Shown piece by piece: positions 1,575-46,631 of a DNA stretch of 64,000 nucleotides. Every line of letters starts with the position of its first letter. Position 1 is the stretch's first letter. The translations under genes were made by a program, and so were the position numbers. The notes under the pieces are model-generated. The model ran no database searches. It saw only the letters and a list, made by a program, of their open reading frames with translations, and was not told where the DNA came from. Where the stretch lies: NCBI GenBank assembly GCA_002269645.1, contig NIVC01002289.1, forward strand, positions 1 through 64,000, given 5' to 3'. Origin of the DNA: Macrostomum lignano. Its lineage: Eukaryota.

Positions 1575-2483
1575 ATGTCCGAACGAGAATTTCTTGCAGA
1601 AATTTCGCGACAAGGACACTCGATCGTTTAAGAATTTCACGGCAGCGCAATTCCTTGAGGTGTGGAATCACTACGACAAGGATGGCAGCGGCTACATCGA
1701 GGACGAGGAGCTGGACGGCTTCCTGAAGGAGTTCGTGACTTCAATCATTCGGACCAAATCGGCCAGGAGGTATCTCGGACAGCGCGCCAAGGACTCAAAG
1801 AGGAGTTCATGCTGGCCTACGACGAGAACGAGGACAATCGAATCGAGATTGGCGAGCTGGCCCAGATGCTGCCGACTGACCAGAGCTTCCTGCTGCTGTT
1901 CCGGCGGGACAATCCGCTCGAATCCAGCGTGGAATTCATGCGCATCTGGAAGCAATTCGACAAGGACAATTCTGGCCAGATTGACAAAGAGGAACTCAAG
2001 GAGTTTCTGCGCTAGCCTGCTGCAGGAGCGGAACCAGGAGGCCTCGGTGAGCGAGGAGAAGCTGGCCGAGTACGCCGACGCCATCTTGAAGCTCTTCGAC
2101 ACAAACGGCGAACGGTCAGCTGCAGCTGAGCGAGATGGCGAAGCTGCTGCCGTCAAGGACAACTACCTGAGCCGGCCGCTGCTGAAGAACGCCGCCTCGG
2201 CTGTCCTCGTACGAGATTGACAAAATCTTTCGCAAGTACGACACGGACAAGACGGCAAAATCGAGGGCGACGAGCTGGAGGGCTTCCTCAGGACCTGCTG
2301 GAGCTCACTGGCGAGCAGTTTGACGATCAGAAGATGAAGTTCTTCAAGGAGGTGAATCATGGAGCAGTGGGACACTGACAAGGACGGTGGATCGGCAAGG
2401 ATGAGCTGAAGATGATCCTCATGCAGCACAAGCGGATGGCGCAGGAGCAGGAGGCCTATGACAGGGGCCTGTGCGATGAGTGA
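1575..2483 (+). CDS. Calbindin-32/calretinin-family hexa-EF-hand Ca-binding protein, intronless, broken by about 8-10 single-base indels (assembly error or pseudogene)
   Basis: Stitching frames gives ENFLQKFRDKDTRSFKNFTAAQFLEVWNHYDKDGSGYIEDEELDGFLKEF...FMLAYDENEDNRIEIGELAQMLP...FLLLFRRDNPLESSVEFMRIWKQFDKDNSGQIDKEELKEFL...EEKLAEYADAILKLFD...KYDTDKDGKIEGDELEGFL...WDTDKDG.IGKDELKMILMQ. This is collinear with Drosophila calbindin-32 (Cbp53E) as recalled. ATG 1575, TGA 2481-2483, AATAAA 2533-2538. Confidence 0.9.
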
Positions 2484-4796: not shown

Positions 4797-7700
4797 CTAG
4801 GAGCTCCGCACGGACACTCTGTCCGCAGCTGAGCAACAGCTGCACCGCTGCTGCAGTCGCCCACAGACCCGTCGCCAACACCGGCCGAAGTCGCTGGCCA
4901 TTGTCAGCATGCCCAAGAAGGTGGCGGAAGCAACGGCAAAGGAGCCCAACGCCAGGTGCATCACAGAGGCCGGGCCAGCCGCAGGCGACACCAGCAGATA
5001 GCCGGCCAGAGGCGGCAGGGCGGACATGCCCAGTTGGCCGCCGATCAGCCAGCTGCAGGCGACGGGGCCGGCCACCGGCAGCCGCTGCTCCAGCCAGGTG
5101 ACGCCTGTGGCGTACAGAACGGAGACGGCCAGGCCGAAGGCGGCCGTGCCGGCGAAGGCCAGCCAGGTGGACTCGGACAGGCTCAGAGTGGCCAGGGCTG
5201 CCAGGCAGGCGACCAGGTGCGCCAGCAGGATGCCGGTCGGCCGGGCCCAGCGGGAGACGACAACGCCGAGGCCGCGGCCGACTAGAAAGCCGGCAAAGAA
5301 GGCGGCCTGCAGGGCGGCGGCGCCGCGCGCGCTGAGCTGGAGGCCCGGGGCGCAGCTGGCGTAGGCGCCACCGAACGACCAGAAGATGTTCTCGCCGCCG
5401 ACAGACGCGAAGTAGAAGGCCGCGGTAAGAACCACCAGGCAGCGGCGTCGCCAGGCGGCAGTGGCGGCGGGCGGAGCGGCGCCTCGGCTTCCAGAGGAAT
5501 CGGTGGCGGACTCGGCGGCACCGGGGCCGGCAGGACAGCGGGCTGGCGGGGAGGAGCGCCAGCAGCAGCAGCCCGACGGACGCGGCAGCCTGAAGTGCCG
5601 CCAACACCGAGTACGGAGTGACCAGCAGCAGAGGAGCGGCTGTCGCTCCGCCGCCAACTGTCGACGCCGGGCTGGTCGAAGTGGCGAGCGCTGGTGTCTT
5701 CAAGTTGTGCCACCGAGTAGCGGATTGGTTCGAGGCGCCGCTTCCGACTCGACCGCAGGCGCTTTCGCTACTTTCCCACGCCTGCTGCTCTTCGTCTATG
5801 GGTGGCTCTGTGGCATCGTTGGCGGCGAGGAACGGGTGCAGCATCAGCGGCGCGATGAGGCCGCCGAGTGCGGTGCAGAAGTGCAGCGAGTGCAGGATCG
5901 GGCGCGACTGCAGCGAACCGAGCAGGCGGATCACCAAGATGCCATTGGCTGACAGAGAAGTTGAGGGGGTTTCTGTGCATTGAGTTTGTGTTTCTAATCT
6001 CTAAACTTAGCTTGAATCTCTAAGGGCCAGTGGGTTTTACAAGCTGCAGCTACCCAGGGATCGGCAGTTTTGCTAATCTAGCTCATAATTCTGTGCCAGG
6101 TGAGAAAAGAAAGAAATGGAATCGAGGAGAGAGAAGAGAGGAAGGGTGAGAGGAGAGAGGAGAGAAGAGGAGAGGCCACAGAGACGAGTGAGGGGATGAG
6201 ATGAAAGATGGGATGATGAAAAGATGGGAGAGAGGAGATAAGAGGAGATAATGGAGGAGAGAGACCAGAGAAGAGGGGAGTGAAGGAAGAGGAGAGAAGA
6301 GAGAGGAGGAAGAAATGAGAGAAGAGAAGGGAGAAAGAGAAGAGAAGAGAAGAGAAGAGAAGAGAAGAGAAGAGAAGAGAAGAGAAAGAAGAGAAGAGAA
6401 GAGAAGAGAAGAGAAGAGAAGAGAAGAGAAGAGAAGAGAAGATAAGAGAAGAGAAGAGAAGAGAAGAGAAGAGAAGAAAGAGAGAGAAGAGAAGAAAGAG
6501 AAGAGAAGAGAAGAGAAGAGAAGAGAAGAGAAGGGAGGAGAGAAGAGGAAGGGAGGTAGAGAGAGAAGAGAAGAGATAGGAGAGAAGAGAGAGAAGAGGA
6601 GAGAAGAGAGAAGAGAGAAGAGAGAAGAGAAGAGGGAGGAGAGAAGAGAGAAGAGAGAAGAGAGAATAGAGGAGAGAAGAGAGAAGAGAGAAGAGAGAAG
6701 AGAGAAGAGAGAAGAGAAGAGAGAAGAGAGAAAAGAGAAGATAGAAGAGAGAAGAGAAGAGAGAGGAGAGAAGAGAGAAGAGAAGAGAGAGGAGAGAAGA
6801 GAGAAGAGAGAAGAGAGAGGAGAAGAGAGAAGAGAGAAGAGAGAAGAGAGAAGAGAGAAGAGAGAAGAGAAGAGAGAAGAGAGAAGAGAAGAGAGGGGAG
6901 AGAAGAGAGAAGAGAGCTGAGAAGAGAGAAGAGAGCTGAGAAGAGACACAGACCTTGAGCGGGCCGAATTTCTGTTGTAAAATTTCAAAGGACCCGATGG
7001 CCGGGGCGTAGTTTGGGAAGGTACGGGGGTAACGCTCCTCAAAAAATGGCTCTTGTTGACGGCTACCTGCGCCCCTGATGCCAGGACGAGTGACGGCAAT
7101 TTTGCAAGCTCTTTGTTTATTCACTCGTTTTTGAATCGCCAATGACATCGCTTCCAGTTCTGAATCTACCTGGTACTTGAACTACTCCATACGATACCAA
7201 AATACGCCACAAACACAAATCAATCAGCCAGCCAGTTCACTGCACCGGTCTCGAGGGCTCCGTGTCCGGCGCCAAGCAGTCCGGCCAGGCTGAGCGCCAG
7301 AGCGCAGCTGCGCGCCAACGACGCGCCGAGCATGGCGCCGGCGCTAACCAGATTTCCAGCGGCCAGAAAAGCCGGCCGGGCCAGGCGGCTGCTGTCCGGC
7401 AGCCGGTTGAACACGAAGCCGGTCAGCAGTGCCAGCAGGCAGGCCGCGGCAGACTTGGCCGTGAACCAGAATCCCATGTCGCTGAGGCCGACGCCCACCT
7501 GCCTGGCCAGGTGCATCAGGCTGCTGCCCGAGAGCGTTGGCCATGCCGATGCAGATGTGACTGAGGCACAGCAGGGCCAGCAGCGGCCAGTGCAGCCGCA
7601 GCACTACTGCGAACTGAGTGAGGGGCGTTAGCGGTTTTGCAGCTGCAGCTGGGCTGCACTTTTTAACTTTGGAAGTGAAGGGTAGAAAGGGAAGGGAAGC

Positions 7701-8088
7701 GAAGGGAATTGAAGGGAAGGGAAGGGAAGGAAGAAGAAAGGGAAGAGAAGGGAAGAGAAAGGAAGGGAAGGGAAGGGAAGGGAAGGGAAAGGAAGAAAGT
7801 AGAAGTGGGGTTCCACCTCAAACTTAAAAGCCTTCAATGGTTTTCCAGCAGGCGAATGAATGAAAATGCTGTACAGTTTGTCAGTACAGTTGAGTTCTTG
7901 GCAGCGGCGCAGCATCTCACCTTGACTGCCACCGAGTCGATAGAGGCGACCGGACTCGGAAGCTGCTGTGCGCCATCAGTTGGGATCCCGTTGCCAAGCA
8001 ACTCTTCTTTGCCAACGCCCGCCTCTTTGTTACTGCAGGTTTCGTCTGTCGGCTGTCGTTCCGGCGGCTTCTCTTCGATTGGCAGCAT
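4797..8088 (-). CDS. MFSD4: Major facilitator superfamily transporter, MFSD4/NaGLT1 (FucP-like) type; 3 exons, 2 apparent frameshifts
   Basis: Exon 1 8088-7921 (MLPIEEK...VAVK, donor AAG|GTGAGA). Exon 2 7658-7246 (LLALLCLSHICIGMANALG, frameshift near 7528, then LMHLARQVGVGLSDMGFWF...GHGALET). Exon 3 5948-4797 (ANGILVIRLLG...PILHSLHFCTALGGLIAPL, frameshift near 5500-5600, then FYFASVGGENIFWSF...AFFAGFLVGRGLGV...FGLAVSVLYATGVTW...IGGQLGMSALPPLAGYL). Splice phases are compatible. The LHF..ALG..IAP and VG.E..F motifs are typical of MFSD4. Confidence 0.85.
6125..6945. repeat. Polypurine (AGAAG/AGAG)n tract in MFS intron 2
   Basis: About 820 bp almost purely A/G on the + strand. Confidence 0.95.
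7685..7800. repeat. (GGAAG)n-type purine tract in MFS intron 1
   Basis: Directly visible; it forms the polypyrimidine tract before the exon 2 acceptor on the minus strand. Confidence 0.9.
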
Positions 8089-8413
8089 TGCTCTGCAAGC
8101 AATGCGCCTTACATACTACTGTTGCACTCCGGTTCGACAGTAGATTGGCTGCGCAACGGAAACCATCCTAAAGTTATTTAAAAAATTTGATCTTATATCC
8201 AACTTTGATAAGATTTCAATTAATATTTTACATTCTTTTTAAGCAGTTTTTGCAGTAATGTTAGCCCCAGACAGAGGCTCTATCGAGTTGAGGAAGTTAA
8301 AGTAGCCTACGAGCGTACATATGTATACTCGTGCGCATATTCTTCATCTGCGAAATATGTCTGTGGTCGCTATTCCCCAAAATCTGAAGAACATGTTTCC
8401 TTAATGAATTATA

Positions 8414-8950
8414 TACCTTTTTGCGATCTAGTTTGCCAAAACTAGAGTCATGACCAGAGTTTCAGCCACAGACAACTCTTTGAAAACTGCAATCAGTTTT
8501 GCCCAAACTGCGATCTAGTTTGCCCATAGCAAAGAAAACACCACAGACATACATAGCAAGATCAAAGAATGGCCCAGCGTGAACCTTACAACAGGATTTC
8601 AGCAAAGGACCGGCAGCGATTGATTCAAGCATATCAGGGTGGAGAGGACTGGCAAGATTTCGGTAGGCTGTTGGGCATCTCACGAAGAAACGTGACTTAC
8701 ATAGTTGGACAATTCAACGCAACCGGTCGTATAGAGCCTCTGCCTCGCGGAGGTGCCAAGCGGAGGTCCCTTAACAATGCTATGATTGAGAGCATTTGTG
8801 CCTACGTCTACCATTATAAACTCGCTGTTTATTGTTCACTGTTACAGTTTATTTCGTCACACTTCCGAATTGATTCTCAATAAAAATCCTTCTTGGCTTG
8901 CTATGGGCAAACTAGGTCGCAGTTTTGGCAAACTAGATCGCAAAAAGGTA
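8414..8950 (+). mobile_element. Internally deleted Tc1/mariner (IS630-like) DNA transposon retaining only the N-terminal HTH region
   Basis: TIR TACCTTTTTGCGATCTAGTTTGCCAAAACT at both ends, flanked by TA on each side (8412-8413 and 8951-8952). ORF 8569-8883 (MAQREPYNRISAKDRQRLIQAYQGGEDWQDFGRLLGISRRNVTYIVGQFNATGRIEPLPRGG) resembles the paired-like HTH of Tc1/IS630 transposases. No DDE domain is present. Confidence 0.85.
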
Positions 8951-9280: not shown

Positions 9281-9893
9281 TAGGAACTGATGGATCAAGC
9301 TAAAGGATTGATGGATCAAGCTAAAGGATTGATGGATCAAGCTAAAGGATTGATGGATCAAGCTAAAGGATTGATGGATCAAGCTAAAGGATTGATGGAT
9401 CAAGCTAAAGGATTGATGGATCAAGCTAAAGGATTGATGGATCAAGCTAAAGGATTGATGGATCAAGCTAAAGGATTGATGGATCAAGCTAAAGGATTGA
9501 TGGATCAAGCTAAAGGATTGATGGATCAAGCTAAAGGATTGATGGATCAAGCTAAAGGATTGATGGATCAAGCTAAAGGATTGATGGATCAAGCTAAAGG
9601 ATTGATGGATCAAGCTAAAGGATTGATGGATCAAGCTAAAGGATTGATGGATCAAGCTAAAGGATTGATGGATCAAGCTAAAGGATTGATGGATCAAGCT
9701 TCAGGAACTGATGAATCAAGCTTTAGGAATTGATGGATCAAGCTTTATGAACTGATGAATCAAGCTGCAGGAACTGATGAATCAAGCTTCAGGAACTGAT
9801 GAATCAAGCTTCAGGAACTGATGAATCAAGCTTCAGGAACTGATTAATCAAGCTTCAGGAACTGATGAATCAAGCTTCAGGAACTGATGGATC
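9281..9893 (+). repeat. 21-bp tandem array (TGATGGATCAAGCTAAAGGAT / AGGAACTGATGAATCAAGCTTC variants), about 29 units
   Basis: Directly visible; reverse-complement homolog of the array at 13539-14328. Confidence 0.97.
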
Positions 9894-13538: not shown

Positions 13539-14328
13539 TTGATCCATCAATTCCAGATGCTTGATTCATCAGTTCTGAAGCTTGATTTATAAGTTCCTTA
13601 AGCTTGATCCACCGGTTCCTTAAGCTTGATCCACCGGTTCCTTAAGCTTGATCCACCGGTTCCTTAAGCTTGATCCACCGGTTCCTTAAGCTTGATCCAT
13701 CAGTTCATTAAGCTTGATCCATCAGTTCATTAAGCTTGATCCATCAGTTCATTAAGATTGGTCCATCAGTTCCTTAAGCTTGATCCATCAGTTCATTAAG
13801 CTTGATCCATCAGTTCATTAAGCTTGATCCATCAGTTCATTAAGATTGGTCCATCAGTTCCTTAAGCTTGATCCATCAGTTCATTAAGCTTGATCCATCA
13901 GTTCATTAAGCTTGATCCATCAGTTCATTAAGCTTGATCCATCAGTTCATTAAGCTTGATCCATCAGTTCATTAAGCTTGATCCATCAGTTCCTTAAGCT
14001 TGATCCATCAGTTCATTAAGCTTGATCCATCAGTTCATTAAGCTTGATCGATCAGTTCATTAAGCTTGATCCATCAGTTCATTAAGCTTGATCCATCAGT
14101 TCCTTAAGCTTGATCCATCAGTTCCTTAAGCTTGATTTATAAGTTCCTTAAGCTTGATCCTAGGATGACTTAAGCTCGATCCATCAGTCCTTTACCTAAG
14201 CTTGATCCATCAGTTCCTGAGCTTGATCCATCAGTTCCTAAAGCTTGATCCATCAGTTCCTGAGCTTGATCCATCAGTTCCTGAGCTTGATCCATCAGTT
14301 CCTAAAGCTTGATCCATCGGTTCCTTAA
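13539..14328 (-). repeat. 21-bp tandem array (AAGCTTGATCCATCAGTTCCT variants), about 37 units, inverted relative to 9281-9893
   Basis: Directly visible; the unit is the reverse complement of the left-array unit. Confidence 0.97.
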
Positions 14329-15075
14329 TATTGATTAGTCGGTTTTTTAACAGCAGAAACAATTGTCTTTTTCTTCAGTACCAAACATTTCAAACCAACC
14401 GGACTGTCGGTTGTGCACTCTCGGTCCAGTGGAGTAGACTTTAGTCTACGATACCATTAAATTAGTTTGGGGGATGCAGTGCGCGGGTACAATGCGCCGA
14501 TTTCCTCGCGTTATGCTAATTGCTAATAAGCAGCAAAACTCCAAATCAAATTAATACAAGATTTCGCATTGCTCGCATGGGACAATTCTTTAGTAATAGT
14601 GCAAACTGCACTTGTATATAACAGTTAAAACTTTTCCGAGAAAGCATTACACTCAATTCAAAAGCACTTAAGAATTCAGAAGTTTGTCTACTGAAATTTC
14701 CGGACACTGTCCGAAAGTAAAACACTCCTCTTGCTCGTATGTTTGGTGATTTGCGGTCAAAAGAAACTGGAAGTTAAAAAAGAAACCTTCAAACTTCATC
14801 TGATCAAATCGCTTCGAGAGAATATTTATTTATGCCTTCTACTGACGAAAAAAAATGTTGCAACTCATCAATGCAGAATATTTTCTCTTTTGCAGGAGCA
14901 ACTCGAGCAAAATTAGGCTAAAAATATTACTATTCGAGCAGTTTAAAAACAGTTCGCAGAATTTCCTTATTAGCAAAGTCTGATTTATCAGAGGAAAATT
15001 AAAAAACGGCTTTGTGAACAATGAATAAATGCAGCAGTTGGGAATTTATTAGCCAGAGTCTTCGTCATCACGGCT

Positions 15076-15309
15076 TTACAGGCCAGTGCAGTCGACTCCC
15101 TTGGGCGGCTTGACCTGCCTCTTTTGGCTGTCGGCGCACACAGTGGCCAGCAGTACCTGGAATTCGGCGCCTCGTCTTACCATCCGGCGAGACTCGGGCA
15201 GGGCCATCGCCTCCGCGCCGAATGTCGCCGGCGGTGTCAGGGTGGTCAGCAGCAGGACGACGGTCGTCAGCACGAGAAGCGTCAGGTTCTTTCGGCTGGA
15301 GGTGGCCAT
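15076..15309 (-). CDS. Single-exon 77-aa secreted prepropeptide (signal peptide, RR processing site, 2-Cys mature peptide); family not recognised
   Basis: MATSSRKNLTLLVLTTVVLLLTTLTPPATFGAEAMALPESRRMVRRGAEFQVLLATVCADSQKRQVKPPKGVDCTGL*. ATG in GCCATGG context, GC-rich codon use like neighbouring real exons, AATAAA on the minus strand at 15050-15045 (26 nt after the stop), and CCAAT boxes upstream. Confidence 0.7.
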   Translation of the reverse strand: MATSSRKNLTLLVLTTVVLLLTTLTPPATFGAEAMALPESRRMVRRGAEFQVLLATVCADSQKRQVKPPKGVDCTGL

Positions 15310-15510
15310 GGCTGACTGAGACAATTCTTATAGGTAACACGACAGCGACGCAAAAACCTCGAGTATATTGAGTAATATTTAATAGGGAACCGACAACAAA
15401 ATGACTTTTTATTGCAGCGGAGGAGGGTGCTGGAGACTTTTGTTGATAAGAACAACAGTCAATTAATTAATAAACAGCCTATGCGACGAAACTTCCAACA
15501 CACAGGGGGC

Positions 15511-15713
15511 TCTGATTGGCTGGCCTTAGCAAGCTCACTTTGTCCGATTCCACCCACCCCACGCTGGCCGCCCCTTTACACTCACTTATTCAATTCTCTG
15601 CCCCAAGTTTCCTACCCCCACCCCCTAGAATGAACGCTGTGAAAGCTCAGTGTACAGGCTCAGTGTGCGCATTGACGCAGGCGGGCGAGGCTTCACAAAA
15701 TCTGATTGGCTGG
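15511..15713 (-). promoter_or_regulatory. Two identical NF-Y/CCAAT boxes (CCAGCCAATCAGA on the minus strand) upstream of the peptide gene
   Basis: TCTGATTGGCTGG at 15511-15523 and 15701-15713 matches the extended CCAAT consensus. Assignment to the peptide gene is an inference. Confidence 0.5.
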
Positions 15714-15921
15714 TGGGGAGATAAGTGACGAAAAGAATGATTTCACTGACTGAGTCACTGATAAAAGAGTTAGAGTGTTTGCGTGAATTGAGCATCTGGA
15801 GGGGTCAATAAAAGTACGCAATAAAAATATGTGAATATTCCATAAACATTAAATGTGTAACTGCATCGTAGCTGTTTCCTAGTCCTAGTTTCTCCATTTA
15901 TTAACCAAATTGTTATAAATA

Positions 15922-16211
15922 TACTCAGCAACATTGAAAAGTCGCCACCCATTGCCCCAATGAGCAGTGTCTTTCGACCAGCGTCTATCACCTGGGCAAT
16001 CATTTTGATGTGAAAAAAATGCTTGAAAAAACAATGAAAACCGGTCGGAAGCTTCAATCCACCCAATCTTCACCCTCTGCTCTTCCCAATACCTTCTCAC
16101 CCAGTTACACTCTGCGTCACGTAACGCAACTTGTGTCACTCAAAAGTCAATACTTGAGCTAGAATTTACGGCGCACTCTCAAAGGTGGCGACTATTTAAT
16201 GTTGTTGAGTA
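15922..16211. mobile_element. Tc1/mariner-type MITE, about 290 bp
   Basis: TIR TACTCAGCAACATTGAAAAGTCGCCACC vs inverted TACTCAACAACATTAAATAGTCGCCACC (3 mismatches); TA on both flanks. Confidence 0.8.
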
Positions 16212-17862
16212 TACTTTCACCCATTATGGCTATTATTCCAGTTCCACAGTTACTACCCAATTTAAATTGGCGTGAGACAGCGTAAGAGGTGGGTTACCTG
16301 TTGCTTAACATAGTAACTGCGTCATTATTACGAAAGTTCCTTGCTATTGTGATTCGGATCGAACCATCGGGTTTTATAGTGTTTCTATTGTTTCTATTGT
16401 TGTTTCTATTGCTATTGTTTGTTTCTAAATAGACACTTTCTATTGTTTATTTGTTTCTATTTCTACAATAGCACGAAACGCACGTGGCAGTAAAAACTCA
16501 TGCCTGACGTGAACTCATGCGGTTTCATTATCCATATCCCTATCAATAATTTCCTGTCTCTGCTGCTCGAGTTCCTCGGAGCTCAAATCAAATCATTTTT
16601 GCTCAAATAAGGCGGCGGACGGGATCCGGGATGTGAGTAAGCAGCAGCCGCAGACTTGGGACCTCGCTCTCGCGTGCGACCGGAGGGATAAATGCCCCCC
16701 CCTGCCTAGTGGTTTTTTTCCCACCGCAAAGGATAGCAGTGACGCGCGGCCTTAGTCTGGGAGTAGGGCCGACTCTGCTTCCTTCATCTCGATATGAGAA
16801 GACTCAGTCAAGGAGATCTTGAGCTAGAAGCTGGATGCCAGGAAAAACTCTCATTTCCACAAACCATAGAGCTGCCTAAATTTTCAGTCAGCCTATGGCC
16901 TATGTGTGTTAAAAACGCACGGCAACCCGCTCGCTGTGAATGTCTATGGCCAAAAGCCTTTGATTCAGTGCAAAGCCATCAGACTGCTGCAGGCATATCA
17001 AAACAGTCAGATGAAAGAGTAATCTTTGATGCTCTAGATAAACTTTGAATAGATTTTCTGCGTTTTATGAGCTGACTGCTGAAACCATTGATCGTTCTGC
17101 CCATGGACCCTTCGCGCAAGGGTGGACACTTTTCAATATTGCTGAGTGTATAAAAGTTCTATATTCCCCTGCACAAGGGGACAACTAAAGCAACGTATAT
17201 ACAGGACGCGACACTCGCGTTTCATAGAAAAAGTTTTGAAGGCCTCTTTTTCGCCGAAAAATGCACTACAGAGATAGGAGTTTTCAAATGTTCACAAAAC
17301 ATTTTCCATAGATTTCGAGTGTTGCGTCCTTCTACTTTAGTAGTCCTTGATTCTGCATCGATTTGGGACATAACTAAAACTTGATCAGCCTAGTGGAACA
17401 ATCTTTAGGCTATCTGGTATGTGCAAACTACATGTTGAGAAACCGATGACTCCAAATTCTAGCTCTAGATCTCCTTGGCTCGAGTCCGTGTCTCCGCCTC
17501 CGCATCCGGTATTTTGCTTCGAGTCGTGAGTGCTGCAGCCACTGATTGGGGAGTTGGCAGCCAATGACTTTGATTCGAGGACAGTGTCGGCGTGTGTAGG
17601 ATGACGGCGCTGATATAATATCTATATAGCCTCAAGAGTTTCCTTTGCTTTACGTTCGAGTAGACTTTTCTCGTCTCTTCTAACTAGTTCTGTCTCATCC
17701 TCTCTTTAGTCCTCCCTTAGTCCTCTCTTTTCTTAAGCTTTGACTGCCTATAGCCAAGTTCTTTAAGTCCTACTTAGACCTGGGCTCCTCCACTGTCTGT
17801 CCATACAGCCTTCGCCTCAACCTAAGCAAAGGGCCTGGCAACGGACGGGACTTCAGCGGTTC

Positions 17863-20800: not shown

Positions 20801-23800
20801 CGTATCGCCTGTCTCTGCCTGAGCATCAAAGTTTTTTTAAACAGCAGACTCGGCCAGGATGCAGCAGCAGCAGCAGCAGCAACAGGCTTCTCAGACTCCA
20901 CAGGCGGCTCGGCCAAGGCAGCAGCTGGCCTCGGCCGGCGCCTGTCCGGAGGAGCTGCTCGGACAGCCAGCACCGCTGGGCCGAGCACCCAGTGTCCGGA
21001 AACGGCACAGCTACGCCACGAAATCCTGCCACTCCACCGACGAGGTGCTGCTAGACGAAGGAAGCCAGGGCTGGTGAGTCGGCACTCGAGCCTGGCCTCC
21101 GAGATCGCGGCTGTTTTTCACACTTTTACATGTGTTAATTAATCTCAGGTGTCAATCAATTTGGCTGAGCACAAACAAACCTACCGGGTAACCTTCATAG
21201 AGCATTGGGTCACAATTAATTACAATCACAACAGCATTCACCAGGTCCCCCTCAGTCTTTAATAAAGGGGAATTCGCCTTCCGCAGCCTGGGCCGCTATC
21301 GGGAGAAGGGCCTGCCGTTTTGATTGCCTTTTTGCCTTCATTTTCCCAATAGAAGGGGAAGTGAGCGAATGAAAATAATTGACCTGAGAATCCTGAGAAT
21401 CCGGGCGATAGCGGAGGAGAACATTCAAAACAAGCATGCGGGAGGGTGGAACAGCGGCACAGGAATTATTTCACAAACAACAGTTACGAGAGTACTAATG
21501 CGCAGTGTTTTTTTATTTCTATTTTAGCCAAGGGCCTGCGGAAATCCTTCTGAGCAGCGAGAGCCCGTCTGGAGAGTGCACGGTTCGTGGCGGCACTCTC
21601 AGAGGCCTCATTGAGTTTGCGATTGGCTGCTTCGGTGAGCGGCGCTGGAGAATGTATTGAGAGGATTTAGAGAATGTACTGAGGGGCATAGGAGAATGTA
21701 TTGAGAGGATTTGGAGAATGTACTGAGGGGCGTAGGAGAATGTATTGAGAGGATTTGGAGAATGTACTGAGGGGCATAGGATAATGTATTGAGAGGATTT
21801 GGAGAATGTACTGAGGGGCGTAGGAGAATGTATTGAGAGGATTTGGAGAATGTACTGAGGGGCATAGGATAATGTATTGAGAGGATTTGGAGAATGTACT
21901 GAGGGGCGTAGGAGAATGTATTGAGAGGATTTGGAGAATGTACTGAGGGGCATAGGATAATGTATTGAGAGGATTTGGAGAATGTACTGAGGGGCATAGG
22001 AGAATGTATTGAGAGGATTTGGAGAATGTACTGAGGGGCGTAGGAGAATGTATTGAGAGGATTTGGAGAATGTACTGAGGGGCATAGGAGAATGTATTGA
22101 GAGGATTTGGAGAATGTACTGAGGGGCATAGGAGAATGTATTGAGAGGATTTGGAGATTGTACCGAGAAGCATAGGAGAATGTACCGAGAGGAGTTGGAG
22201 AACATACCGAGAAACATAGGAGACGAGAGGTGTATGAGAATGTACTGTAGAGAAGTAATACTATAAGCTATAATATTACTATTTGTTTTAAAAACTCGCA
22301 GAAGTGTCCAACAAGGAGGTGCACATCGCCAACCAGAGTTTTTTGGACGTGTTCTTCCTGATGCACGAGTGGATTTCGGACTCAGTGACGGTGGTATCGA
22401 CTGTCATCGAGCTGTGCGAGAGGAACAGTCAAATACTTCGGCGTGGCCTGCTCATGATCAGGTGAGTGCGAGCTCTTCTGGGTGTACTTTCTAGAATTGA
22501 AGCCGGCGCTCTTTTAAACTACGAGGCACTGCTACGAGGCCTTTGTTGAATTGGGAAATCGTGAAGGTTCGTATCGAGAGAGAGAGGGGGAGAGAGAGGG
22601 AGGGAGAGAGGGAGAGGGAGAGAGAGGGAGGGAGAGAGGGAGAGAGAGAGGGAGAGAGATAGAGGGAGAGAGAGGGAGGGAGAGAGGGAGAGAGAGAGGG
22701 AGAGAGATAGAGGGAAAGAGAGAGGGAGAGAGAGAGGGAGAGAGAGAGGGAGAGAGATAGAGGGAAAGAGAGAGGGAGAGAGAGAAGAGAGAAAGAAAGA
22801 GACAGAGGGTTACTGGCTGAGCTCCACACCTCTCCAAACCTTTAGCCGGGAGCAGAAAGCCCTGACCGTACAAGTACTGTTGCAGTGCGTGACCAGTTCG
22901 GACAAATGCTGAAGTGTGTTGCAAAACAGGGGCCAATTTCCGGCCGTCTCATCCTCCCAGCTTCCCTGTCCGCCTTCTCGACTTCATCAGCCGCCGCCTT
23001 GCTGACGCGCTCTTCTTCCTTCTTCGGCGCCACGCTTTGCCTCATTTCTCCCCGCTGCCAGTGGCAGCGTTTAATCTAAAAAAGTCACTTCCAGCTGCTC
23101 AGGATTCACAGAAAATTTCCACGCTCTAAGGAGAAATCGGTGAGGTAGGGGGTGGGGGAGGGGCAGATGCCGCGCCGATGACGGGCTTAAGGTCGAAATC
23201 TCCCAATGCGGCCCTGGCTAGCTGATCCCAAATCCGTTCGCGGCTCAAGGTGGTCACGCGAAACCGCGTCGAAGCGTTTTGAAACCGGATCAGCCGCGAA
23301 TCGGCGGGGTGCGGCTTAAGCTAATCCCGCGATCCCGACCCCAGCTGCGTGTTAATTCCCATAGCCGATCGGGAGCAGGAATTCTCTGTGCGCAAAGATT
23401 TATCTGTTTATTTGAATGTGGAAATTGCTCCTTACTGTTGATCCTGTCACTGTTGATCCTGTCACTGTTGATCCTGTCACTGTTGATCCTGTCACTGTTG
23501 ATCCTGTCACTGTTGATCCTGTCACTGTTGATCCTGTCACTGTTGATCCTGTCACTGTTGATCCTGTCACTGTTGATCCTGTCACTGTTGATCCTGTCAC
23601 TGTTGATCCTGTCACTGTTGATCCTGTCACTGTTGATCCTGTCACTGTTGATCCTGTCACTGTTGATCCTGTCACTGTTGATCCTGTCACTGTTGATCCT
23701 GTCACTGTTGATCCTGTCACTGTTGATCCTGTCACTGTTGATCCTGTCACTGTTGATCCTGTCACTGTTGATCCTGTCACTGTTGATCCTGTCACTGTTG

Positions 23801-26800
23801 ATCCTGTCACTGTTGATCCTGTCACTGTTGATCCTGTCACTGTTGATCCTGTCACTGTTGATCCTGTCACTGTTGATCCTGTCACTGTTGATCCTGTCAC
23901 TGTTGATCCTGTCACTGTTGATCCTGTCACTGTTGATCCTGTCACTGTTGATCCTGTCACTGTTGATCCTGTCACTGTTGATCCTGTCACTGTTGATCCT
24001 GTCACTGTTGATCCTGTCACTGTTGATCCTGTCACTGTTGATCCTGTCACTGTTGATCCTGTCACTGTTGATCCTGTCACTGTTGATCCTGTCACTGTTG
24101 ATCCTGTCACTGTTGATCCTGTCACTGTTGATCCTGTCACTGTTGATCCTGTCACTGTTGATCCTGTCACTGTTGATCCTGTCACTGTTGATCCTGTCAC
24201 TGTTGATCCTGTCACTGTTGATCCTGTCACTGTTGATCCTGCCAGTTAGAGTTAGTTAGAAGCAGGGGTTGCATCCTGGCACTTCAGGCGATACTGTCAC
24301 ACAACCTAGACTATTCAGACTTAAAGTTCAGTAGCCCACATTCCGCTCTCAGACAGGCCTGAAATGTTTCCACCTGCCCGCTCTCGAGTGGGCCAATATG
24401 GCACACCCCATGCGCCTATCCGCTCTCCGCTACGGCTGCTAGCAGTCTTCTTTAACTGCTTGCTTCTGAAATATACGCTCGTAAGGCATCCTTTTGAAGA
24501 AGACGGGGAAGAACCGAGCTCTTGAAATCACCTTAGGGGAGTGACTGAAATCCGGTCCCAGCTCTCTGACAGTGAATTCAGGTGAGCATGAGAGTGACTG
24601 AAATCCGGTCCCAGCTCTCTGACAGTGAATTCAGGTGAGCATGAGAGTGACTGAAATCCGGTCCCAGCTCTCTGACAGTGAATTCAGGTGAGCATGAGAG
24701 TGACTGAAATCTAGTCCCAGCTAAATGTATCCTAAACCTATAAAAAGATTAAGAAAACTTCCTAATAAAGCCTTCATTTTGACGTCGCTGCAGTTATGAG
24801 TAGTTTCGGGCTTTGCCCACTCATAGCTGCATTTTGTTAAATCACCACCGCCACCAGATTCTGGATCAACAAGTATCCGAGCGCCTTTGAAGCGAACAAA
24901 TCGTTGGCCACACTGGTTGAGGCTTTCTTCGAGCGCGTGAACGCCAGAGACCTGGACGATATCGTGTCCACTATGAACATCCGGGATATGTAGGTGCACT
25001 CTAGCTTTGACCGCCTCTATTGCATTTTAACTTGAAAACTGAAACATCCTTGACCTCTCCTTGCCCCATGGCAGAACCAAGCACGAATGGCTGAGACTGG
25101 ACTCCATGAAGAAGGACCGGGTCAGCAGCAGCAGAGTTAACTCTCTGGTCTTTAACCAGCTGGAAGCGGAGCAGCTGGCTGAGCAGCTCACCGTGCTGGA
25201 GTTCAAGGCCTTCAGGCGCATCCGGGTGAGGGGATTGTGAACCGGACTGAATTCGGATAAAAACAAACTAGTAAATGGTGGTGACTGGGAACTGGGACTG
25301 CGCGGAGACTGGGAACTGGAACTGCTCGGGGACTGGGAGCTGGAACTTCTCAGGAACTGGGAGCTGGAACTGCTCAGCAACTGGGAGCTGGAACTGCTCG
25401 GGGACCGGGAGCTGGAACTGCTCAGGAACTGGGAGCTGGAACTGCTCGAGGACTGGGAGCTGGAACTTCTCAGGAACTGGGAGCTGGAACTGCTCGAGGA
25501 CTGGGAGCTGGAACTGCTCAGGAACTGGGAGCTGGAACTGCTCGGGGACCGGGAGCTGGAACTGCTCAGGAACTGGGAGCTGGAACTGCTCAGGAACTGG
25601 GAGCTGGAACTGCTCGGGGACTGGGAGCTGGAACTGATCAGGGACTGGGAGCTGGAACTGCTCGGGACTGGGAGCTGGAACTGCTCAGGAACTGGGAGCT
25701 GGAACTGCTCGAGGACTGGGAGCTGGAACTGCTCAGGAACTGGGAGCTGGAACTGCTCGAGGACTGGGAGCTGGAACTGCTCAGGAACTGGGAGCTGGAA
25801 CTGCTCGGGGACTGGGAGCTGGAACTGCTCGAGGACTGGGAGCTGGAACTGCTCAGGAACTGGGAGCTGGAACTGCTCGAGGACTGGGAGCTGGAACTGC
25901 TCAGGAACTGGGAGCTGGAACTGCTCGGGGACTGGGAGCTGGAACTGCTCGGGGACTGGGAGCTGGAACTGCTCAGGGACTGGGAGCTGGAACTGCTCAG
26001 GGACTGGGAGCTGGAACTGCTCAGGAACTGGGAGCTGCAGAATTTTTTATGCCAGTGCGCGCTTTTGAAGCTTACCAGGGACCGTAGCTAGGAATGGTGA
26101 GCTAGCTAACGAGACAATGCAATAAAAATCCACGCGTACGAGTAGATCCCGGACCTCAAGGCGTACACTTCTGGCGAGAGCCTTCGCGGCAGTCCAACTC
26201 TGGAGCGCTGCGTTCTGCTATTTAACGGTCTGTGCCAGTGGGTGCAATGCATGGTGCTGAGCAAGTCTACTCCAGCCGAGAGGGCCCGCGTCGTTGCCAA
26301 GTTTCTGGAGGTTTCCGAGGTGAGGCACCGTGCAGTCAAATGTTTTTCCTAAGCTTGCCAAATCGCTAGCGCTACATGCTTTCTGAGTAGGTTGAGTTTT
26401 TGGTAGCGTTTCACAAGTTTGAAATGCCGCATCCTCGGAAACAAAAGAAGCAAAAACGTATAGCTAATTACAATTTGTATTTTCGAAATTTCGAGCTTGT
26501 GAAAGCGACCCGACCTTTGGATGGTCATCAACGAACGGAACTCAGATGAGGAGGGTCATCCACAAATAATCTTTGGATGACAGACCAATAAATCTTCGGT
26601 GATGCGTCAGCCTCCATCTTCACCACAGAGTACAGCAATGGTATCTGTATCAAGCCCGATTAAAATTATCCCTTCAAGGAGCTGCTCAAGCTGAACAACT
26701 TCAACACCCTCATGTCGGTGGTCGGCGGCCTGAGCCACAGCGCCATCGCTCGGCTGAGCAAGACGCACGCTTGTCTGTCGCAGAGGTCGCAGAAGGTCAG

Positions 26801-29800
26801 TTGCTGTGACATTTTATTCTATACTAAATTTTTGAATCAGGAAACACTTCCAAAGGAATACTTCTGTATCTACGTTTCAACAGCTCCTGGTGGACCTCAC
26901 AGAGTTTCTGTCGTCATCTAGCAACTTTTCCAACTATCGCAAGGAATACGCTGAAGCGAAAGATTTCAAAATACCCATTCTGTGAGTTGGGTGAATCCGC
27001 TTAACGTCACATTATGCAGCATTTGAAATTTTCCATACGGTTTAGTAGCTGATCCAGCTGTTCACCTAGTAGCTTATCCAGCAGTTCACCCAGTAGCTGA
27101 TCCAGCAGTTCACCCAGTAGCTGATCCAGCAGTTCACCCAGTAGCTGATCCAGCAGTTCACCCAGTAGCTCATCCAGCAGTTCACCTAGTAGCTTATCCA
27201 GCAGTTCAACTAGTATCTTATCCAGTAGTTCACCCAGTAGCTTATCCAGCAGTTCACCTAGTATCTTATCCAGCAGTTCACCCAGTAGCTTATCCAGCAG
27301 TTCAACTAGTATCTTATCCAGCAGTTCACCCAGTAGCTTATCCAGCAGTTCAACTAGTATCTTATCCAGCAGTTCACCCAGTATCTTATCCAGCAGTTCA
27401 CCCAGTAGCTGATCCAGCAGTTCACCCAGTAGCTGATCCAGCAGTTCACCCAGTAGCTCATCCAGCAGTTCACCCAGTAGCTGATCCAGCAGTTCACCCA
27501 GTAGCTTATCCAGCAGTTCAACTAGTAGCTCATCCAGCACTTCACCCAGTAGCTTATCCAGCAGTTCACCCAGTAGCTGATCCAGCAGTTCACCCAGTAG
27601 CTGATCCAGCAGTTCACCCAGTACCCAGTAGCTCACGCCGCCTTCCCGTCCCCGAGCAGTGCCGTGCACCTGAAAGACCTCATCCAGCTGAACGTGGCCG
27701 TACCGGACAAGCTGAGCGGGACTGCCCGATTCATCAACTGGCGCAAGGTGGTGCAGCTCTCGCAGACTCTCGGCCTGCTGCACGCGGCTCAGCGGGCGCC
27801 GCTCCCGGTTGAGGAGAACGTCACCCTGTGCAACACCCTGCGGGTGGGTGCTGCTGTCAGTGCCAGCATGAAAGACTGCCTGTTAGGCTATGCACGCAAT
27901 TCCTAATGAAAAAATGGGATAGAGAGGATAGACATTTGAGACTAGATATGAGAGGAGAGAGTAGACAGGAGGGAAGCAAGGATAAGAGACCTGATGATGC
28001 AAGAGTCTACCTAGAAACCCAAACTTATTGCAGCTGTCGCTGGACTGCCACCACACTGAGGACGACATCTACGAGGTGTCGCTGCTCCGCGAGCCACGAA
28101 GCCTCTTCTCTGTGAGCTGCTGATTCAATTCTTTAAAAATATACAAGCCAGCCCTATGGCGGGCCAGCTCATCGCGTCTGTAATGCCCCAATTCCAGCCG
28201 TCGACCCCCACTAAGCCGGTGGTGTTCGCGCAGTGGGTGTCCGGTTCCAAGCCGCCGCATCCGGAAACGTTGAAGCGGCACATCTTTGATATGGTCGAGG
28301 CGAGTGCCGACTTCATTTTTTAGCCAGCCTACTTTAATAACCTCCTGTCCCTAGAGCGAAATTATCCCCCTTTTCACCTGCACTACACCTGCCCTCTGTC
28401 TCGGCTCCACCTCTCTGCCCTCTGGAGGGATCGCCCTGATTTTTTGGGTCGATCGCTCACCAGCTTAATACTATAGGTATTCCCCGCGGAATCCCCAGGC
28501 AGCTAATTGCAAATTGACGCTGAAACCCGAGTGCTCAGGACTGGTCAAAGCTCCAGCGAATATTTTTTAATTCTGCCACTCCCCCGACGCAACCCAACCC
28601 TCGCAGGCTGTGTTCAGAGTCTACGATCACGACAAGGACGAGATGATCTCTGAGACGGAGTTCGCCCAGATTGCTGAGAACTTTCCCTTCATCGATTCAT
28701 TCGCTGTACTCGACGCCGACAAGTGAGCAGCAGGGAGTCCTCGCCGCACAGCGCTTCTTTCTCCTCTCCTCTCCTGTCTTCCCCGCCTCGGCTACCCGGC
28801 AGTTTACCCTGGAGACGCCGCTGTTGCGCTGTTGCAGAAAAAAAGCTCTTTATTCCCCATGCCAGCCGGCCTGGGGCCCTTAATTTAATCACAGAGAAAT
28901 GGGTTCTGCGCTCTGCTCTGTACTCATTTTTTCCCTTTGGCTTTTCCCTTGCCGCCGTCTCCTGCCTTCCCAATTCCTTCTTTTTTCCCGTTTCGGCAAA
29001 AATTACTGCTTTTGCAGTCTGAGGCACCCCTCGTCTCCAGCGCCCCTCCTTGTGCGGGTCTGGGAAGCCTCATTAACAGGGGGAGGGGGGTTCAGGAGAC
29101 GTGGAGGAAACCCGGCGCCTTCGCAGTCTGCTCTCAAACTGCCCTCTTAAGCTGTTCCCGCTTTTGCCTGCCTCCGAATCCCTAAAAATCAAGCTGGCAG
29201 ACTTTCTCCCGCGAGTGCTCGAGCCGTCGCGGTCAACTCCAATCCCTGGCTTGATTTGTTTGAGCTGTTCCTGCCGGGCTCTGCCTGGGCAATAGGGCTG
29301 CAACATCATGGCGAAATTTAATTAACTGTATGCAGCCGGAGGGATGAGACGGGAAATAGAAACACTAGAAAAATGGGTTGTCTTCGGAGAAGTACTAGGG
29401 GACTCAAAGACCGAATAAGGTGGACGCGGGGCTGGAGGCTGAGCTGCTTTCTCAATGCCAGCTCCTATCTATTTGGCGCTAACCAACATTTATCTGTCTA
29501 TTCACGCATTGCCTACTGTAAGTAGTCTCACGAGGGCTCTAAAAATCTATAATCATTTTTAAGCGACGGCATGATTTCGAAGAACGAACTGAAGAACTAC
29601 TTTATCCGGGCCAATTCGCACGCCTTAAAGAGCAGTTTTAAGCACGACTTCCACGAGACTTCGTACTTTAAGCCGACCTTCTGCGACCGCTGTAACGGCC
29701 TGCTGTGGGGCCTCATCAAGCAGGGCTGGAAGTGCCGGGACTGCGGCATCAACGTGCACAAGCACTGCAAGGACACCGTTGTGATGGAGTGCCGCGTCAG

Positions 29801-32045: not shown

Positions 32046-46631
<14,586 letters not shown>

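What the first reader, a model, noticed from the sequence alone, without database searches (positions are those of the whole stretch)
15045..15713. Orphan secreted prepropeptide with a 17-residue disulfide ring: candidate new neuropeptide or defence peptide
Seen: a compact single-exon gene with a hydrophobic signal peptide, a short acidic-then-basic pro-region ending RRMVRR, and a 31-aa C-terminal peptide GAEFQVLLATVCADSQKRQVKPPKGVDCTGL with exactly two Cys (C-x15-C). It has a good ATG context, AATAAA 26 nt after the stop and two identical CCAAT boxes upstream. Established: signal + dibasic/RxxR site + small C-terminal peptide is the standard layout of neuropeptide, toxin and antimicrobial precursors. 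Natriuretic peptides also have a 17-residue ring, but the CFG/DRI motif is absent here, so no homology is claimed. Inference: an undescribed peptide family. The KR inside the ring could yield a two-chain disulfide-linked product.
Basis: partly seen in the sequence, partly recalled or inferred. Interest (0 to 1): 0.7.

Follow-up and report, generated by a model that had tools for sequence, protein, structure and literature searches.

The report
Orphan small secreted-peptide gene in a flatworm
This is a real-looking, already annotated but uncharacterised 77-residue gene of the flatworm Macrostomum lignano that probably makes a small secreted peptide with one disulfide loop, has no detectable relative anywhere, and shows nothing yet to mark it as a neuropeptide or a defence peptide.

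Summary
On the minus strand, 15309-15076 is an ATG-to-TAA ORF of 77 aa. It has a hydrophobic N-terminus, an RRMVRR cluster, a 31-aa C-terminal peptide with two Cys (C-x15-C), a GCCATGG start, AATAAA 26 nt after the stop, and two identical CCAGCCAATCAG boxes upstream.

The window is Macrostomum lignano contig NIVC01002289.1. The 77-aa protein is already a GenBank gene model on four near-identical contigs, and that annotation was built from RNA-seq transcripts.

Codon statistics favour the annotated frame: +21.5 bits against +4 or less in the other five frames, with 0 of 2000 shuffles reaching it. GC1/2/3 is 0.63/0.50/0.81, and a GC-rich island coincides with the ORF.

No homologue was found in 5.8 billion clustered proteins, 1.84 billion representatives, Pfam or PDB. 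An older UniProt model fuses the ORF to a downstream MFS transporter, but the bridging exons look non-coding.

The four copies are too alike (8 variable columns in 1.4 kb) to test selection, and no close-relative data could be searched.

Best reading: a lineage-restricted secretory prepropeptide. The neuropeptide and defence labels are untested. The mature peptide has net charge +1, low amphipathicity and no amidation signal. Interest is modest.

The parts
15076..15309 (-). Complete CDS (77 codons plus TAA stop) of the orphan gene. It is identical to the GenBank 77-aa protein P0001.
   Evidence: Codon-bias and GC3 tests.
15217..15309 (-). Residues 1-31, predicted cleavable signal peptide. The n-region is MATSSRKN (+2), the h-region L9-T25 (17 uncharged residues), and the c-region PPATFG, with T at -3 and G at -1. 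An alternative cleavage site lies after A34.
   Evidence: Hydropathy, shuffle test, AF2 helix 6-24. The cleavage site comes from the (-3,-1) rule; SignalP was not available.
15172..15216 (-). Residues 32-46, the pro-region AEAMALPESRRMVRR. An acidic 9-mer (net -2) is followed by two adjacent dibasic sites. RMVR also fits the minimal R-x-x-R furin motif.
   Evidence: Sequence, charges. Cleavage is inferred from the general (K/R)-Xn-(K/R) convertase motif.
15079..15171 (-). Residues 47-77, the putative mature peptide GAEFQVLLATVCADSQKRQVKPPKGVDCTGL. Cys codons are at 15138-15136 (C58) and 15090-15088 (C74). An internal KR sits at residues 63-64.
   Evidence: Sequence. Net charge +1 and muH 0.28 or less. 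The AF2 helix 41-64 runs into this segment. The disulfide is inferred.
15306..15312 (-). Start context GCCATGG. An in-frame TAA lies at 15330-15328, and there is no upstream ATG for 363 nt.
15045..15050 (-). AATAAA poly(A) signal starting 26 nt after the stop, which implies a 3' UTR of roughly 50 nt.
   Evidence: Actual poly(A) site use was not tested.
15512..15523 (-). Proximal CCAGCCAATCAG (NF-Y-type CCAAT box), about 205-215 nt upstream of the ATG.
   Evidence: Invariant in all four copies, but nearly everything else is too.
15702..15713 (-). Distal identical CCAGCCAATCAG box, about 395-405 nt upstream of the ATG.
15500..15700 (-). GC-rich (54-60%) putative promoter patch between the two CCAAT boxes. 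It includes GGGGCGG at 15574-15568 and G-runs.
   Evidence: Function is inferred only.

Best explanation
This is a genuine, transcript-annotated, lineage-restricted (orphan) protein-coding gene of Macrostomum lignano that encodes a 77-residue secretory pre-pro-peptide.

Proposed mechanism:
1. The N-terminal 31 residues act as a cleavable ER signal peptide, with cleavage after TFG31 or possibly after A34. This is inferred.
2. The remaining peptide of about 46 residues travels the secretory pathway, where C58 and C74 form one disulfide closing a 17-residue loop. This is inferred.
3. A furin- or PC-type convertase cuts at the RRMVRR cluster. Carboxypeptidase trimming then leaves a C-terminal peptide of about 31 residues, GAEF...CTGL, which is not amidated. 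This is inferred.
4. The product is released outside the cell as a signalling or gland-secretion peptide.

What is shown: the ORF, its coding-type codon usage, its separate GenBank gene model, and the absence of any detectable homologue.

What is not shown: secretion, processing, the disulfide, and the cell type.

My sub-estimates:
- Real translated gene: about 0.8.
- Enters the secretory pathway: about 0.65.
- Cut at the RR cluster: about 0.35.
- Neuropeptide or hormone specifically: about 0.15.
- Exocrine or gland product, seminal fluid included: about 0.2-0.25.
For: - The ORF and all its signals are present.
- The window is M. lignano contig NIVC01002289.1. The exact 77-aa protein is a called gene on four contigs of GCA_002269645.1, with a gene range equal to the 234-nt CDS.
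- That GenBank annotation derives from RNA-seq-supported transcripts plus TransDecoder ORFs (PMC5730564).
- Codon usage matches neighbouring real genes only in this frame. It scores +21.5 bits against +4 or less elsewhere, with 0 of 2000 shuffles reaching it, and GC3 is 0.81.
- It is the best ORF outside the training set among 50 candidates.
- The GC island coincides with the ORF, and there is no uATG for 363 nt.
- The N-terminal hydrophobic block is non-random (101 of 20000 shuffles) and is predicted helical.
- The c-region obeys the (-3,-1) rule, as read from the sequence.
- The basic cluster fits the general convertase motif, again as read from the sequence.
- The fusion to the downstream MFS gene in the older model uses bridging exons with negative codon scores and no GC3 excess.
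Against: - I could inspect no RNA, ribosome-profiling or peptide data directly.
- No homologue exists in any searched database, so there is no conservation evidence for the Cys residues or the RR site.
- The four genomic copies are too similar to show purifying selection. There are 8 variable columns in the flanks, 1.6 would be expected in the CDS, and P(0) is 0.2.
- The 17-residue h-region is on the long side and could be a signal anchor.
- AF2 in single-sequence mode draws one continuous helix (41-64) across the proposed cleavage site.
- An internal KR lies inside the loop, and there is no amidation signal.
- SignalP and NeuroPred were not available.
Confidence: 0.5

Rival explanations
1. 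The ORF is transcribed, but it is not a functional secreted peptide. It would be a very young de novo or noise ORF whose product is untranslated, unstable or without function.
For: - There is no homologue at all.
- It is only 77 aa, below TransDecoder's usual 100-aa default (my own knowledge).
- There is no selection signal among the copies.
- GC-rich DNA leaves several frames open: three other ORFs of 49-90 aa overlap it.
Against: - The codon bias is frame-specific and matches real neighbouring genes, at about 5 sd above shuffles.
- The GC island ends exactly at the ORF boundaries.
- The gene has a strong start context, a uATG-free leader, and its own AATAAA.
- The N-terminus is organised like a signal peptide.
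Confidence: 0.2
2. The N-terminal hydrophobic segment is an uncleaved signal anchor. The product would then be a single-pass membrane micro-protein with a 46-50-residue luminal or extracellular tail stapled by one disulfide, not a released peptide.
For: - The uncharged stretch runs for 25 residues (N8 to A32), with a 17-residue hydrophobic core, which is long for a signal peptide.
- The positive charges (R6, K7) sit on the N-terminal side.
- AF2 gives helix 6-24.
Against: - The core is Thr-rich and moderately hydrophobic (best 15-residue KD mean 2.38).
- It is followed by PP and a T-F-G|A site that satisfies the (-3,-1) rule, as is typical of cleaved signals.
- The basic cluster lies 10 residues further on.
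Confidence: 0.12
3. A classical neuropeptide or peptide-hormone precursor. It would be made in neurons, processed by PC2 and CPE, and act on a GPCR or guanylyl-cyclase-type receptor.
For: - The generic prohormone layout is present: signal, acidic spacer, RR sites, small C-terminal disulfide peptide.
- After KR cleavage, Q65 could cyclise to pyroGlu (inference).
Against: - There is no C-terminal Gly-basic amidation signal.
- There is a single peptide copy.
- A dibasic site lies inside the proposed active ring.
- No homologue exists in any flatworm or spiralian protein set in the databases.
- No Pfam neuropeptide family is hit.
- No expression data are available.
Confidence: 0.15
4. The ORF is the first coding exon of the downstream MFS-type transporter gene, as in UniProt A0A1I8I312 (725 aa). 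Its hydrophobic segment would then be a transmembrane helix.
For: - P0002 clusters with the 77-aa protein and contains it in full.
- P0002 maps to minus-strand exons from 15315 down to 4869.
- A CT|GTAAAG donor overlaps the stop codon.
Against: - The bridging exons (13374-13252, 12590-12492, 9106-9047) have negative codon scores and no GC3 excess.
- The later RNA-seq-based GenBank annotation keeps the two genes separate on all contigs.
- The ORF has its own stop and an AATAAA.
- A plausible MFS start (MLPIEEK, 8088) lies 7 kb downstream.
Confidence: 0.04
5. A cationic, amphipathic, membrane-active antimicrobial (defence) peptide.
For: It has a signal, an acidic propiece and a basic cleavage site, then a C-terminal peptide with a C-terminal disulfide loop. 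That resembles the layout of amphibian Rana-box peptides (my own knowledge).
Against: - The 31-mer has net charge only +1.
- Its Eisenberg hydrophobic moment is 0.10-0.28.
- The loop is Pro- and Lys-rich, not amphipathic.
- There are no paralogue expansions of the kind typical of defence peptide families.
Confidence: 0.04

Closest known systems
Generic metazoan prohormone or neuropeptide precursors, including the flatworm npp/spp prohormones (my own knowledge; no specific paper was readable here)
   Same: An N-terminal signal peptide, a short spacer, di- or tetrabasic convertase sites, and a small peptide at the C-terminal end of a short precursor.
   Different: There is no amidation signal and only a single peptide copy. 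No sequence relative was found in any flatworm. There is no evidence of neural expression.
Natriuretic peptides (ANP/BNP/CNP, Pfam PF00212)
   Same: A 17-residue disulfide ring (C-x15-C) near the C-terminus of the precursor, released at an R-x-x-R-type site.
   Different: None of the conserved ring residues (CFG...DRI...S-G-L-G-C) is present. The ring here reads C-ADSQKRQVKPPKGVD-C. There is no Pfam hit even at E up to 10, and no PDB sequence or fold hit. This is a coincidence of ring size, not homology.
Orphan secreted prostate-limited (putative seminal-fluid) transcripts of M. lignano, Mlig-pro1-76 (PMC5977470)
   Same: Same species, and the same class of short proteins with signal peptides and no BLAST hits. 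Of the 76 transcripts, 31 had no hit, and 38 of 65 ORFs had a SignalP signal.
   Different: No expression data link this gene to the prostate. Its sequence is absent from the three held supplementary files.
Amphibian Rana-box antimicrobial peptide precursors (my own knowledge)
   Same: A signal, an acidic propiece and a basic site, then a mature peptide with a C-terminal disulfide loop.
   Different: The Rana box is a 7-residue loop on a strongly cationic amphipathic helix. Here the loop is 17 residues, the net charge is +1, and amphipathicity is low.

Membership tests
Natriuretic peptide family (PF00212) | 17-residue disulfide ring | tested here: met
   C58 and C74 are separated by 15 residues. 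The disulfide itself is inferred.
Natriuretic peptide family (PF00212) | Conserved ring motif CFGxxxDRIxxxSGLGC, detectable by the family HMM | tested here: not met
   The ring sequence is CADSQKRQVKPPKGVDC. There are 0 Pfam families at E up to 10, and no PDB sequence hit at E up to 10.
Neuropeptide / peptide-hormone precursor (functional class) | Cleavable N-terminal signal peptide | tested here: inconclusive
   Heuristics are positive: n/h/c regions, the (-3,-1) rule, and the shuffle test at 101 of 20000. No dedicated predictor was available, and a signal anchor is not excluded.
Neuropeptide / peptide-hormone precursor (functional class) | Peptide flanked by mono- or dibasic convertase sites | tested here: met
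   RR41-42 and RR45-46 lie immediately before G47, and the peptide ends at the stop codon. Actual cleavage was not tested.
Neuropeptide / peptide-hormone precursor (functional class) | C-terminal Gly amidation signal. This is common in flatworm neuropeptides but is not obligatory. | tested here: not met
   The protein ends ...CTGL-stop.
Neuropeptide / peptide-hormone precursor (functional class) | Conservation of the peptide, Cys residues and cleavage sites in related species | not testable with these tools
   No relative was returned. The control shows that the nearest represented relative has only 83% identity in MOCS1, comes from one Logan run, and that M. lignano RNA-seq is not represented. 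Macrostomum genomes and transcriptomes could not be searched.
Neuropeptide / peptide-hormone precursor (functional class) | Expression in neurons or endocrine cells, and detection of the processed peptide | not testable with these tools
   No expression or peptidomic data were accessible. The sequence is not printed in the main text of any held paper.
Cationic amphipathic antimicrobial peptides | Net positive charge (typically +2 or more) and a high helical hydrophobic moment | tested here: not met
   The 31-mer has net charge +1 and muH of 0.10-0.28.
MFS transporter (as exon 1 of UniProt A0A1I8I312) | The ORF is joined by coding exons to the MFS core | tested here: not met
   The bridging exons have codon LLR of -0.26, -0.33 and -0.24 per codon and flat GC3. 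GenBank has separate genes. Splicing itself was not tested with reads.
M. lignano prostate-limited putative seminal fluid proteins (Mlig-pro) | Listed among the 76 prostate-limited transcripts | tested here: inconclusive
   Peptide fragments are absent from the 3 held supplementary files. Those files may not contain sequences.

The most novel reading that the evidence does not exclude
The gene encodes a Macrostomum-specific bioactive peptide of a family not yet described. It would be a 31-residue peptide, or a two-chain peptide after cleavage at the internal KR, held by one 17-residue disulfide loop. It would act as a hormone, a neuropeptide, or a transferred seminal-fluid 'allohormone' that manipulates the mating partner.
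Probability: 0.2. Interest if true: 0.5.

Novelty: new member of a known kind. Interest (0 to 1): 0.25.

Why it matters
If the peptide is real and bioactive, it would add a lineage-specific ligand to a flatworm model used for regeneration and sexual-conflict research. RNAi and transgenesis in that model make a functional test straightforward. It would also be one more example of a young secreted-peptide gene.

As it stands, it is one of many uncharacterised small secreted-protein candidates in a redundant, repeat-rich genome, and it does not bear on a long-standing question. One practical point is that the UniProt/WormBase ParaSite model A0A1I8I312 probably fuses two separate genes.

Tried and rejected
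1. Homology. The searches were word-indexed HMMER against 5.8 billion clusters, exhaustive phmmer against 1.84 billion representatives, Pfam at E up to 10, PDB sequences at E up to 10, and Foldseek of the AF2 model against PDB (best E = 9.5). None returned anything but the protein itself.

2. Paralogues. tblastn of the peptide against the window found nothing better than E = 0.88.

3. Selection test on the four genomic copies. They are near-identical in the flanks as well, so the test has no power. The ML2-derived model also carries the ORF 79/79 identical, but that is not significant either.

4. Absence of Logan transcript contigs as evidence against expression. I rejected this because the MOCS1 control shows that M. 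lignano RNA-seq is not represented in that collection.

5. Literature. No held paper prints the peptide. The seminal-fluid screen supplements lack it. The flatworm neuropeptide-discovery paper (Koziol et al. 2016) is not held.

6. Rfam. No RNA family was found in the window.

7. Other readings. I considered and rejected natriuretic-peptide homology, a cationic AMP, an MFS exon 1, and an antisense or alternative-frame ORF. The other frames score +4 bits or less, and the three ORFs listed there lack either an ATG start or matching signals.

Full report
**What is there.**
- An ATG at 15309 in the context GCCATGG opens a 77-codon frame that ends at TAA 15078-15076.
- An in-frame TAA lies 21 nt upstream. 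The next upstream ATG on that strand is at 15672, so the leader is free of uATGs for 363 nt.
- The product is MATSSRKNLTLLVLTTVVLLLTTLTPPATFGAEAMALPESRRMVRRGAEFQVLLATVCADSQKRQVKPPKGVDCTGL.
- It has exactly two cysteines, C58 and C74, with 15 residues between them.
- AATAAA lies at 15050-15045, starting 26 nt after the stop.
- Two exact copies of CCAGCCAATCAG lie at 15523-15512 and 15713-15702, 190 nt apart. They sit at the two ends of a 54-60% GC patch that also contains GGGGCGG.

**Where it comes from.**
- The exact 77-aa protein is a called gene on four contigs of GCA_002269645.1. The window is the first 64 kb of NIVC01002289.1. Locus L003 is the reverse complement of window 5076-25309.
- The only other cluster member is a UniProt entry from Macrostomum lignano.
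- The GenBank annotation of that assembly was built from RNA-seq-supported transcripts. These were cut at experimentally mapped trans-splice and poly(A) sites, and CDSs were called by TransDecoder (PMC5730564).
- A 77-aa GenBank protein whose gene range is exactly the 234-nt CDS therefore implies transcript support and no intron in the CDS. This is an inference from the pipeline description. I could not look at reads.

**Is it coding?** I built a codon table from 827 codons of neighbouring real exons (MOCS1 and the MFS-type gene).
- The annotated frame scores +21.5 bits, against +4.0 or less for the other five frames. None of 2000 mononucleotide shuffles reach it (mean -32.9, sd 10.4).
- GC at codon positions 1/2/3 is 0.63/0.50/0.81 (chi-square p = 2.4e-4). 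This is the pattern seen in the neighbouring genes.
- Among 50 ATG-ORFs of at least 70 aa outside tandem arrays, it is the best-scoring one not in the training set.
- A GC-rich island (56-72%) spans about 15050-15310, within flanks of 28-42% GC, so it matches the ORF boundaries.
- The ORF therefore looks like real coding sequence, not a chance open frame in GC-rich DNA. Three other ORFs of 49-90 aa overlap it in other frames.

**Protein anatomy.**
- The N-terminus has two positive charges (R6, K7), a 17-residue uncharged hydrophobic core (L9-T25), then PPATFG with T at -3 and G at -1. This is the standard n/h/c layout.
- Only 101 of 20000 residue shuffles concentrate hydrophobicity at the N-terminus as strongly.
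- The basic cluster RRMVRR fits the general (K/R)-Xn-(K/R) convertase motif several times over, and RMVR fits the minimal furin motif. As a cluster, though, it is not statistically unusual (1754 of 20000 shuffles).
- The 31-residue C-terminal peptide has net charge +1 and a hydrophobic moment of 0.10-0.28. It does not look like a cationic amphipathic defence peptide.
- It ends in CTGL, with no amidation signal.
- AlphaFold2 without an alignment gave mean pLDDT 71, with helices at 6-24 and 41-64. The second helix runs across the proposed cleavage site. Foldseek found nothing in PDB.

**Relatives.** There are none.
- The word-indexed search of 5.8 billion clusters found only the protein itself.
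- The exhaustive phmmer scan of 1.84 billion representatives also found only itself.
- Pfam at E up to 10 found no family, and PDB sequences found nothing.
- There are no paralogues in the window.
- As a control, the MOCS1 exon of the same window finds its own GenBank protein, then one Logan transcript at 83% identity (run SRR30276804), and then animals at about 60%.
- So the collection holds one moderately distant relative and no M. lignano RNA-seq assemblies. A 77-aa fast-evolving peptide from such a relative would fall below detection. Absence of hits therefore shows the gene is an orphan at database level. It does not show that sister species lack it.

**Selection.** The four genomic copies differ at 8 internal columns in a 1405-column alignment, all of them outside the CDS. 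About 1.6 would be expected in the CDS, giving P(0) = 0.2. The ML2-derived UniProt model also carries the ORF unchanged. Neither comparison has any power.

**The fused model.** UniProt A0A1I8I312 (725 aa, 'MFS domain-containing') contains the whole ORF.
- It reads past the stop through a CT|GTAAAG donor.
- It then passes through small exons at 13374-13252, 12590-12436 and 9106-9047 before reaching the transporter exons at 8094-4869.
- Those bridging exons have negative codon scores and no GC3 excess. The transporter exons and the 77-aa ORF score positively.
- The later RNA-based annotation keeps the genes separate on every contig.
- I therefore treat the fusion as a prediction artefact, with about 0.04 left for it.

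**Interpretation.** The best-supported reading is a real, lineage-restricted gene for a small secretory pre-pro-peptide. The signal would be cleaved at G31|A32, one C58-C74 disulfide would form, and convertase cleavage at RRMVRR would release GAEF...CTGL.
- Shown: the gene-level statements.
- Inferred from sequence rules: every post-translational step.
- Not indicated by any evidence: which biological role the peptide has.
- The neuropeptide reading rests only on a generic layout. Working against it are the missing amidation signal, the single peptide copy and the internal KR.
- The defence reading fits the physicochemistry poorly.
- In M. lignano, orphan signal-peptide proteins are well documented as gland products. 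In the prostate screen, 31 of 76 transcripts had no BLAST hit and 38 of 65 ORFs had a SignalP signal (PMC5977470). An exocrine role is therefore at least as likely as a neural one. The peptide is not in that paper's held supplements or in the text of any held paper.

**Comparison with known families.**
- It works like a prohormone or secretory propeptide.
- It is not a natriuretic peptide. The ring size matches, but the motif and the HMM do not.
- It is not AMP-like.
- It is not part of the MFS gene.
- It belongs to no described family.

**Verdict.** This is a new, uncharacterised member of a very broad known kind, of modest interest, and everything decisive needs transcript, orthologue or peptide data that these tools do not reach.

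Noticed in passing
window 1-64000; L001-L004: The window is Macrostomum lignano contig NIVC01002289.1. The locus is present on four contigs of the same assembly. L002 is 99.6% identical to the window over 13.4 kb, and all four are more than 99% identical around the gene. This fits the assembly redundancy and recent genome duplication described for the DV1 line.
   Followed up: partly
window 4869-8094 (-): The MFS-type transporter gene lies downstream on the same strand. Its 5' end is modelled differently on each contig (products of 563, 480 and 489 aa, all running off the locus end) and differently again in UniProt (725 aa, fused). A plausible start, MLPIEEK, is at 8088. Pfam gave no hit to the 725-aa model at E up to 0.01.
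   Followed up: partly
window 9288-9893 and 13539-14335: Two minisatellite arrays (21-nt x 28 copies and 22-nt x 36 copies) have units that are near reverse complements of each other (TGATGGATCAAGC... against TTGATCCATCAG...). The same repeat family therefore appears in inverted orientation, lying between the peptide gene and the MFS gene.
   Followed up: no
window 3688-54200 (many sites): The density of long tandem arrays is exceptional: TRF listed 21 rows at score 300 or more, a few of them overlapping. Examples are 32519-35423 (25-nt x 118), 42947-45140 (14-nt x 157), 51781-54200 (23-nt x 106) and 23434-24241 (15-nt x 54, 100% identical). These create long spurious ORFs of up to 1149 aa.
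   Followed up: no
window 8569-8883 (+): A 104-aa ORF matches HTH_28 (E = 2e-6) and weakly matches the paired-box and homeodomain-like families. It is probably the N-terminal DNA-binding part of a transposase remnant upstream of the MFS gene.
   Followed up: no
window 29571-29912 (+): An ORF with a clear C1 (phorbol-ester/diacylglycerol-binding) domain (PF00130, E = 3.7e-17), probably an exon of a kinase or chimaerin-type gene. The adjacent ORF at 29944-30285 also has coding-like codon usage but no Pfam hit.
   Followed up: no
window 62619-62825 and 62911-63771 (+): These are exons of the molybdenum cofactor biosynthesis protein 1 (MOCS1/MoaA) gene, GenBank BOX15_Mlig002786g1. The nearest non-lignano relative in the protein collection is a Logan transcript at 83% identity (SRR30276804).
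   Followed up: partly
window 1594-1760 (+): An EF-hand motif (PF00036, E = 1.3e-6) lies at the start of a 208-aa ORF, probably an exon of a calbindin- or secretagogin-like calcium-binding gene.
   Followed up: no
window 15908-15949 and 16184-16225: A 42-nt inverted repeat (81% complementary, arms 234 nt apart) lies about 600-900 nt upstream of the peptide gene's ATG. It may be a small foldback or MITE-like element.
   Followed up: no
window 15160-15195 (-) and 15575-15590 (-): Splice-like sites occur inside and upstream of the gene. CGGATG|GTAAGA and ttccag|GT lie within the CDS, and a near-consensus donor AATAA|GTGAGT at about 15585 could pair with the acceptor cctataag|AA at 15329. A 5'-UTR intron or an alternative isoform cannot be excluded without reads.
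   Followed up: no
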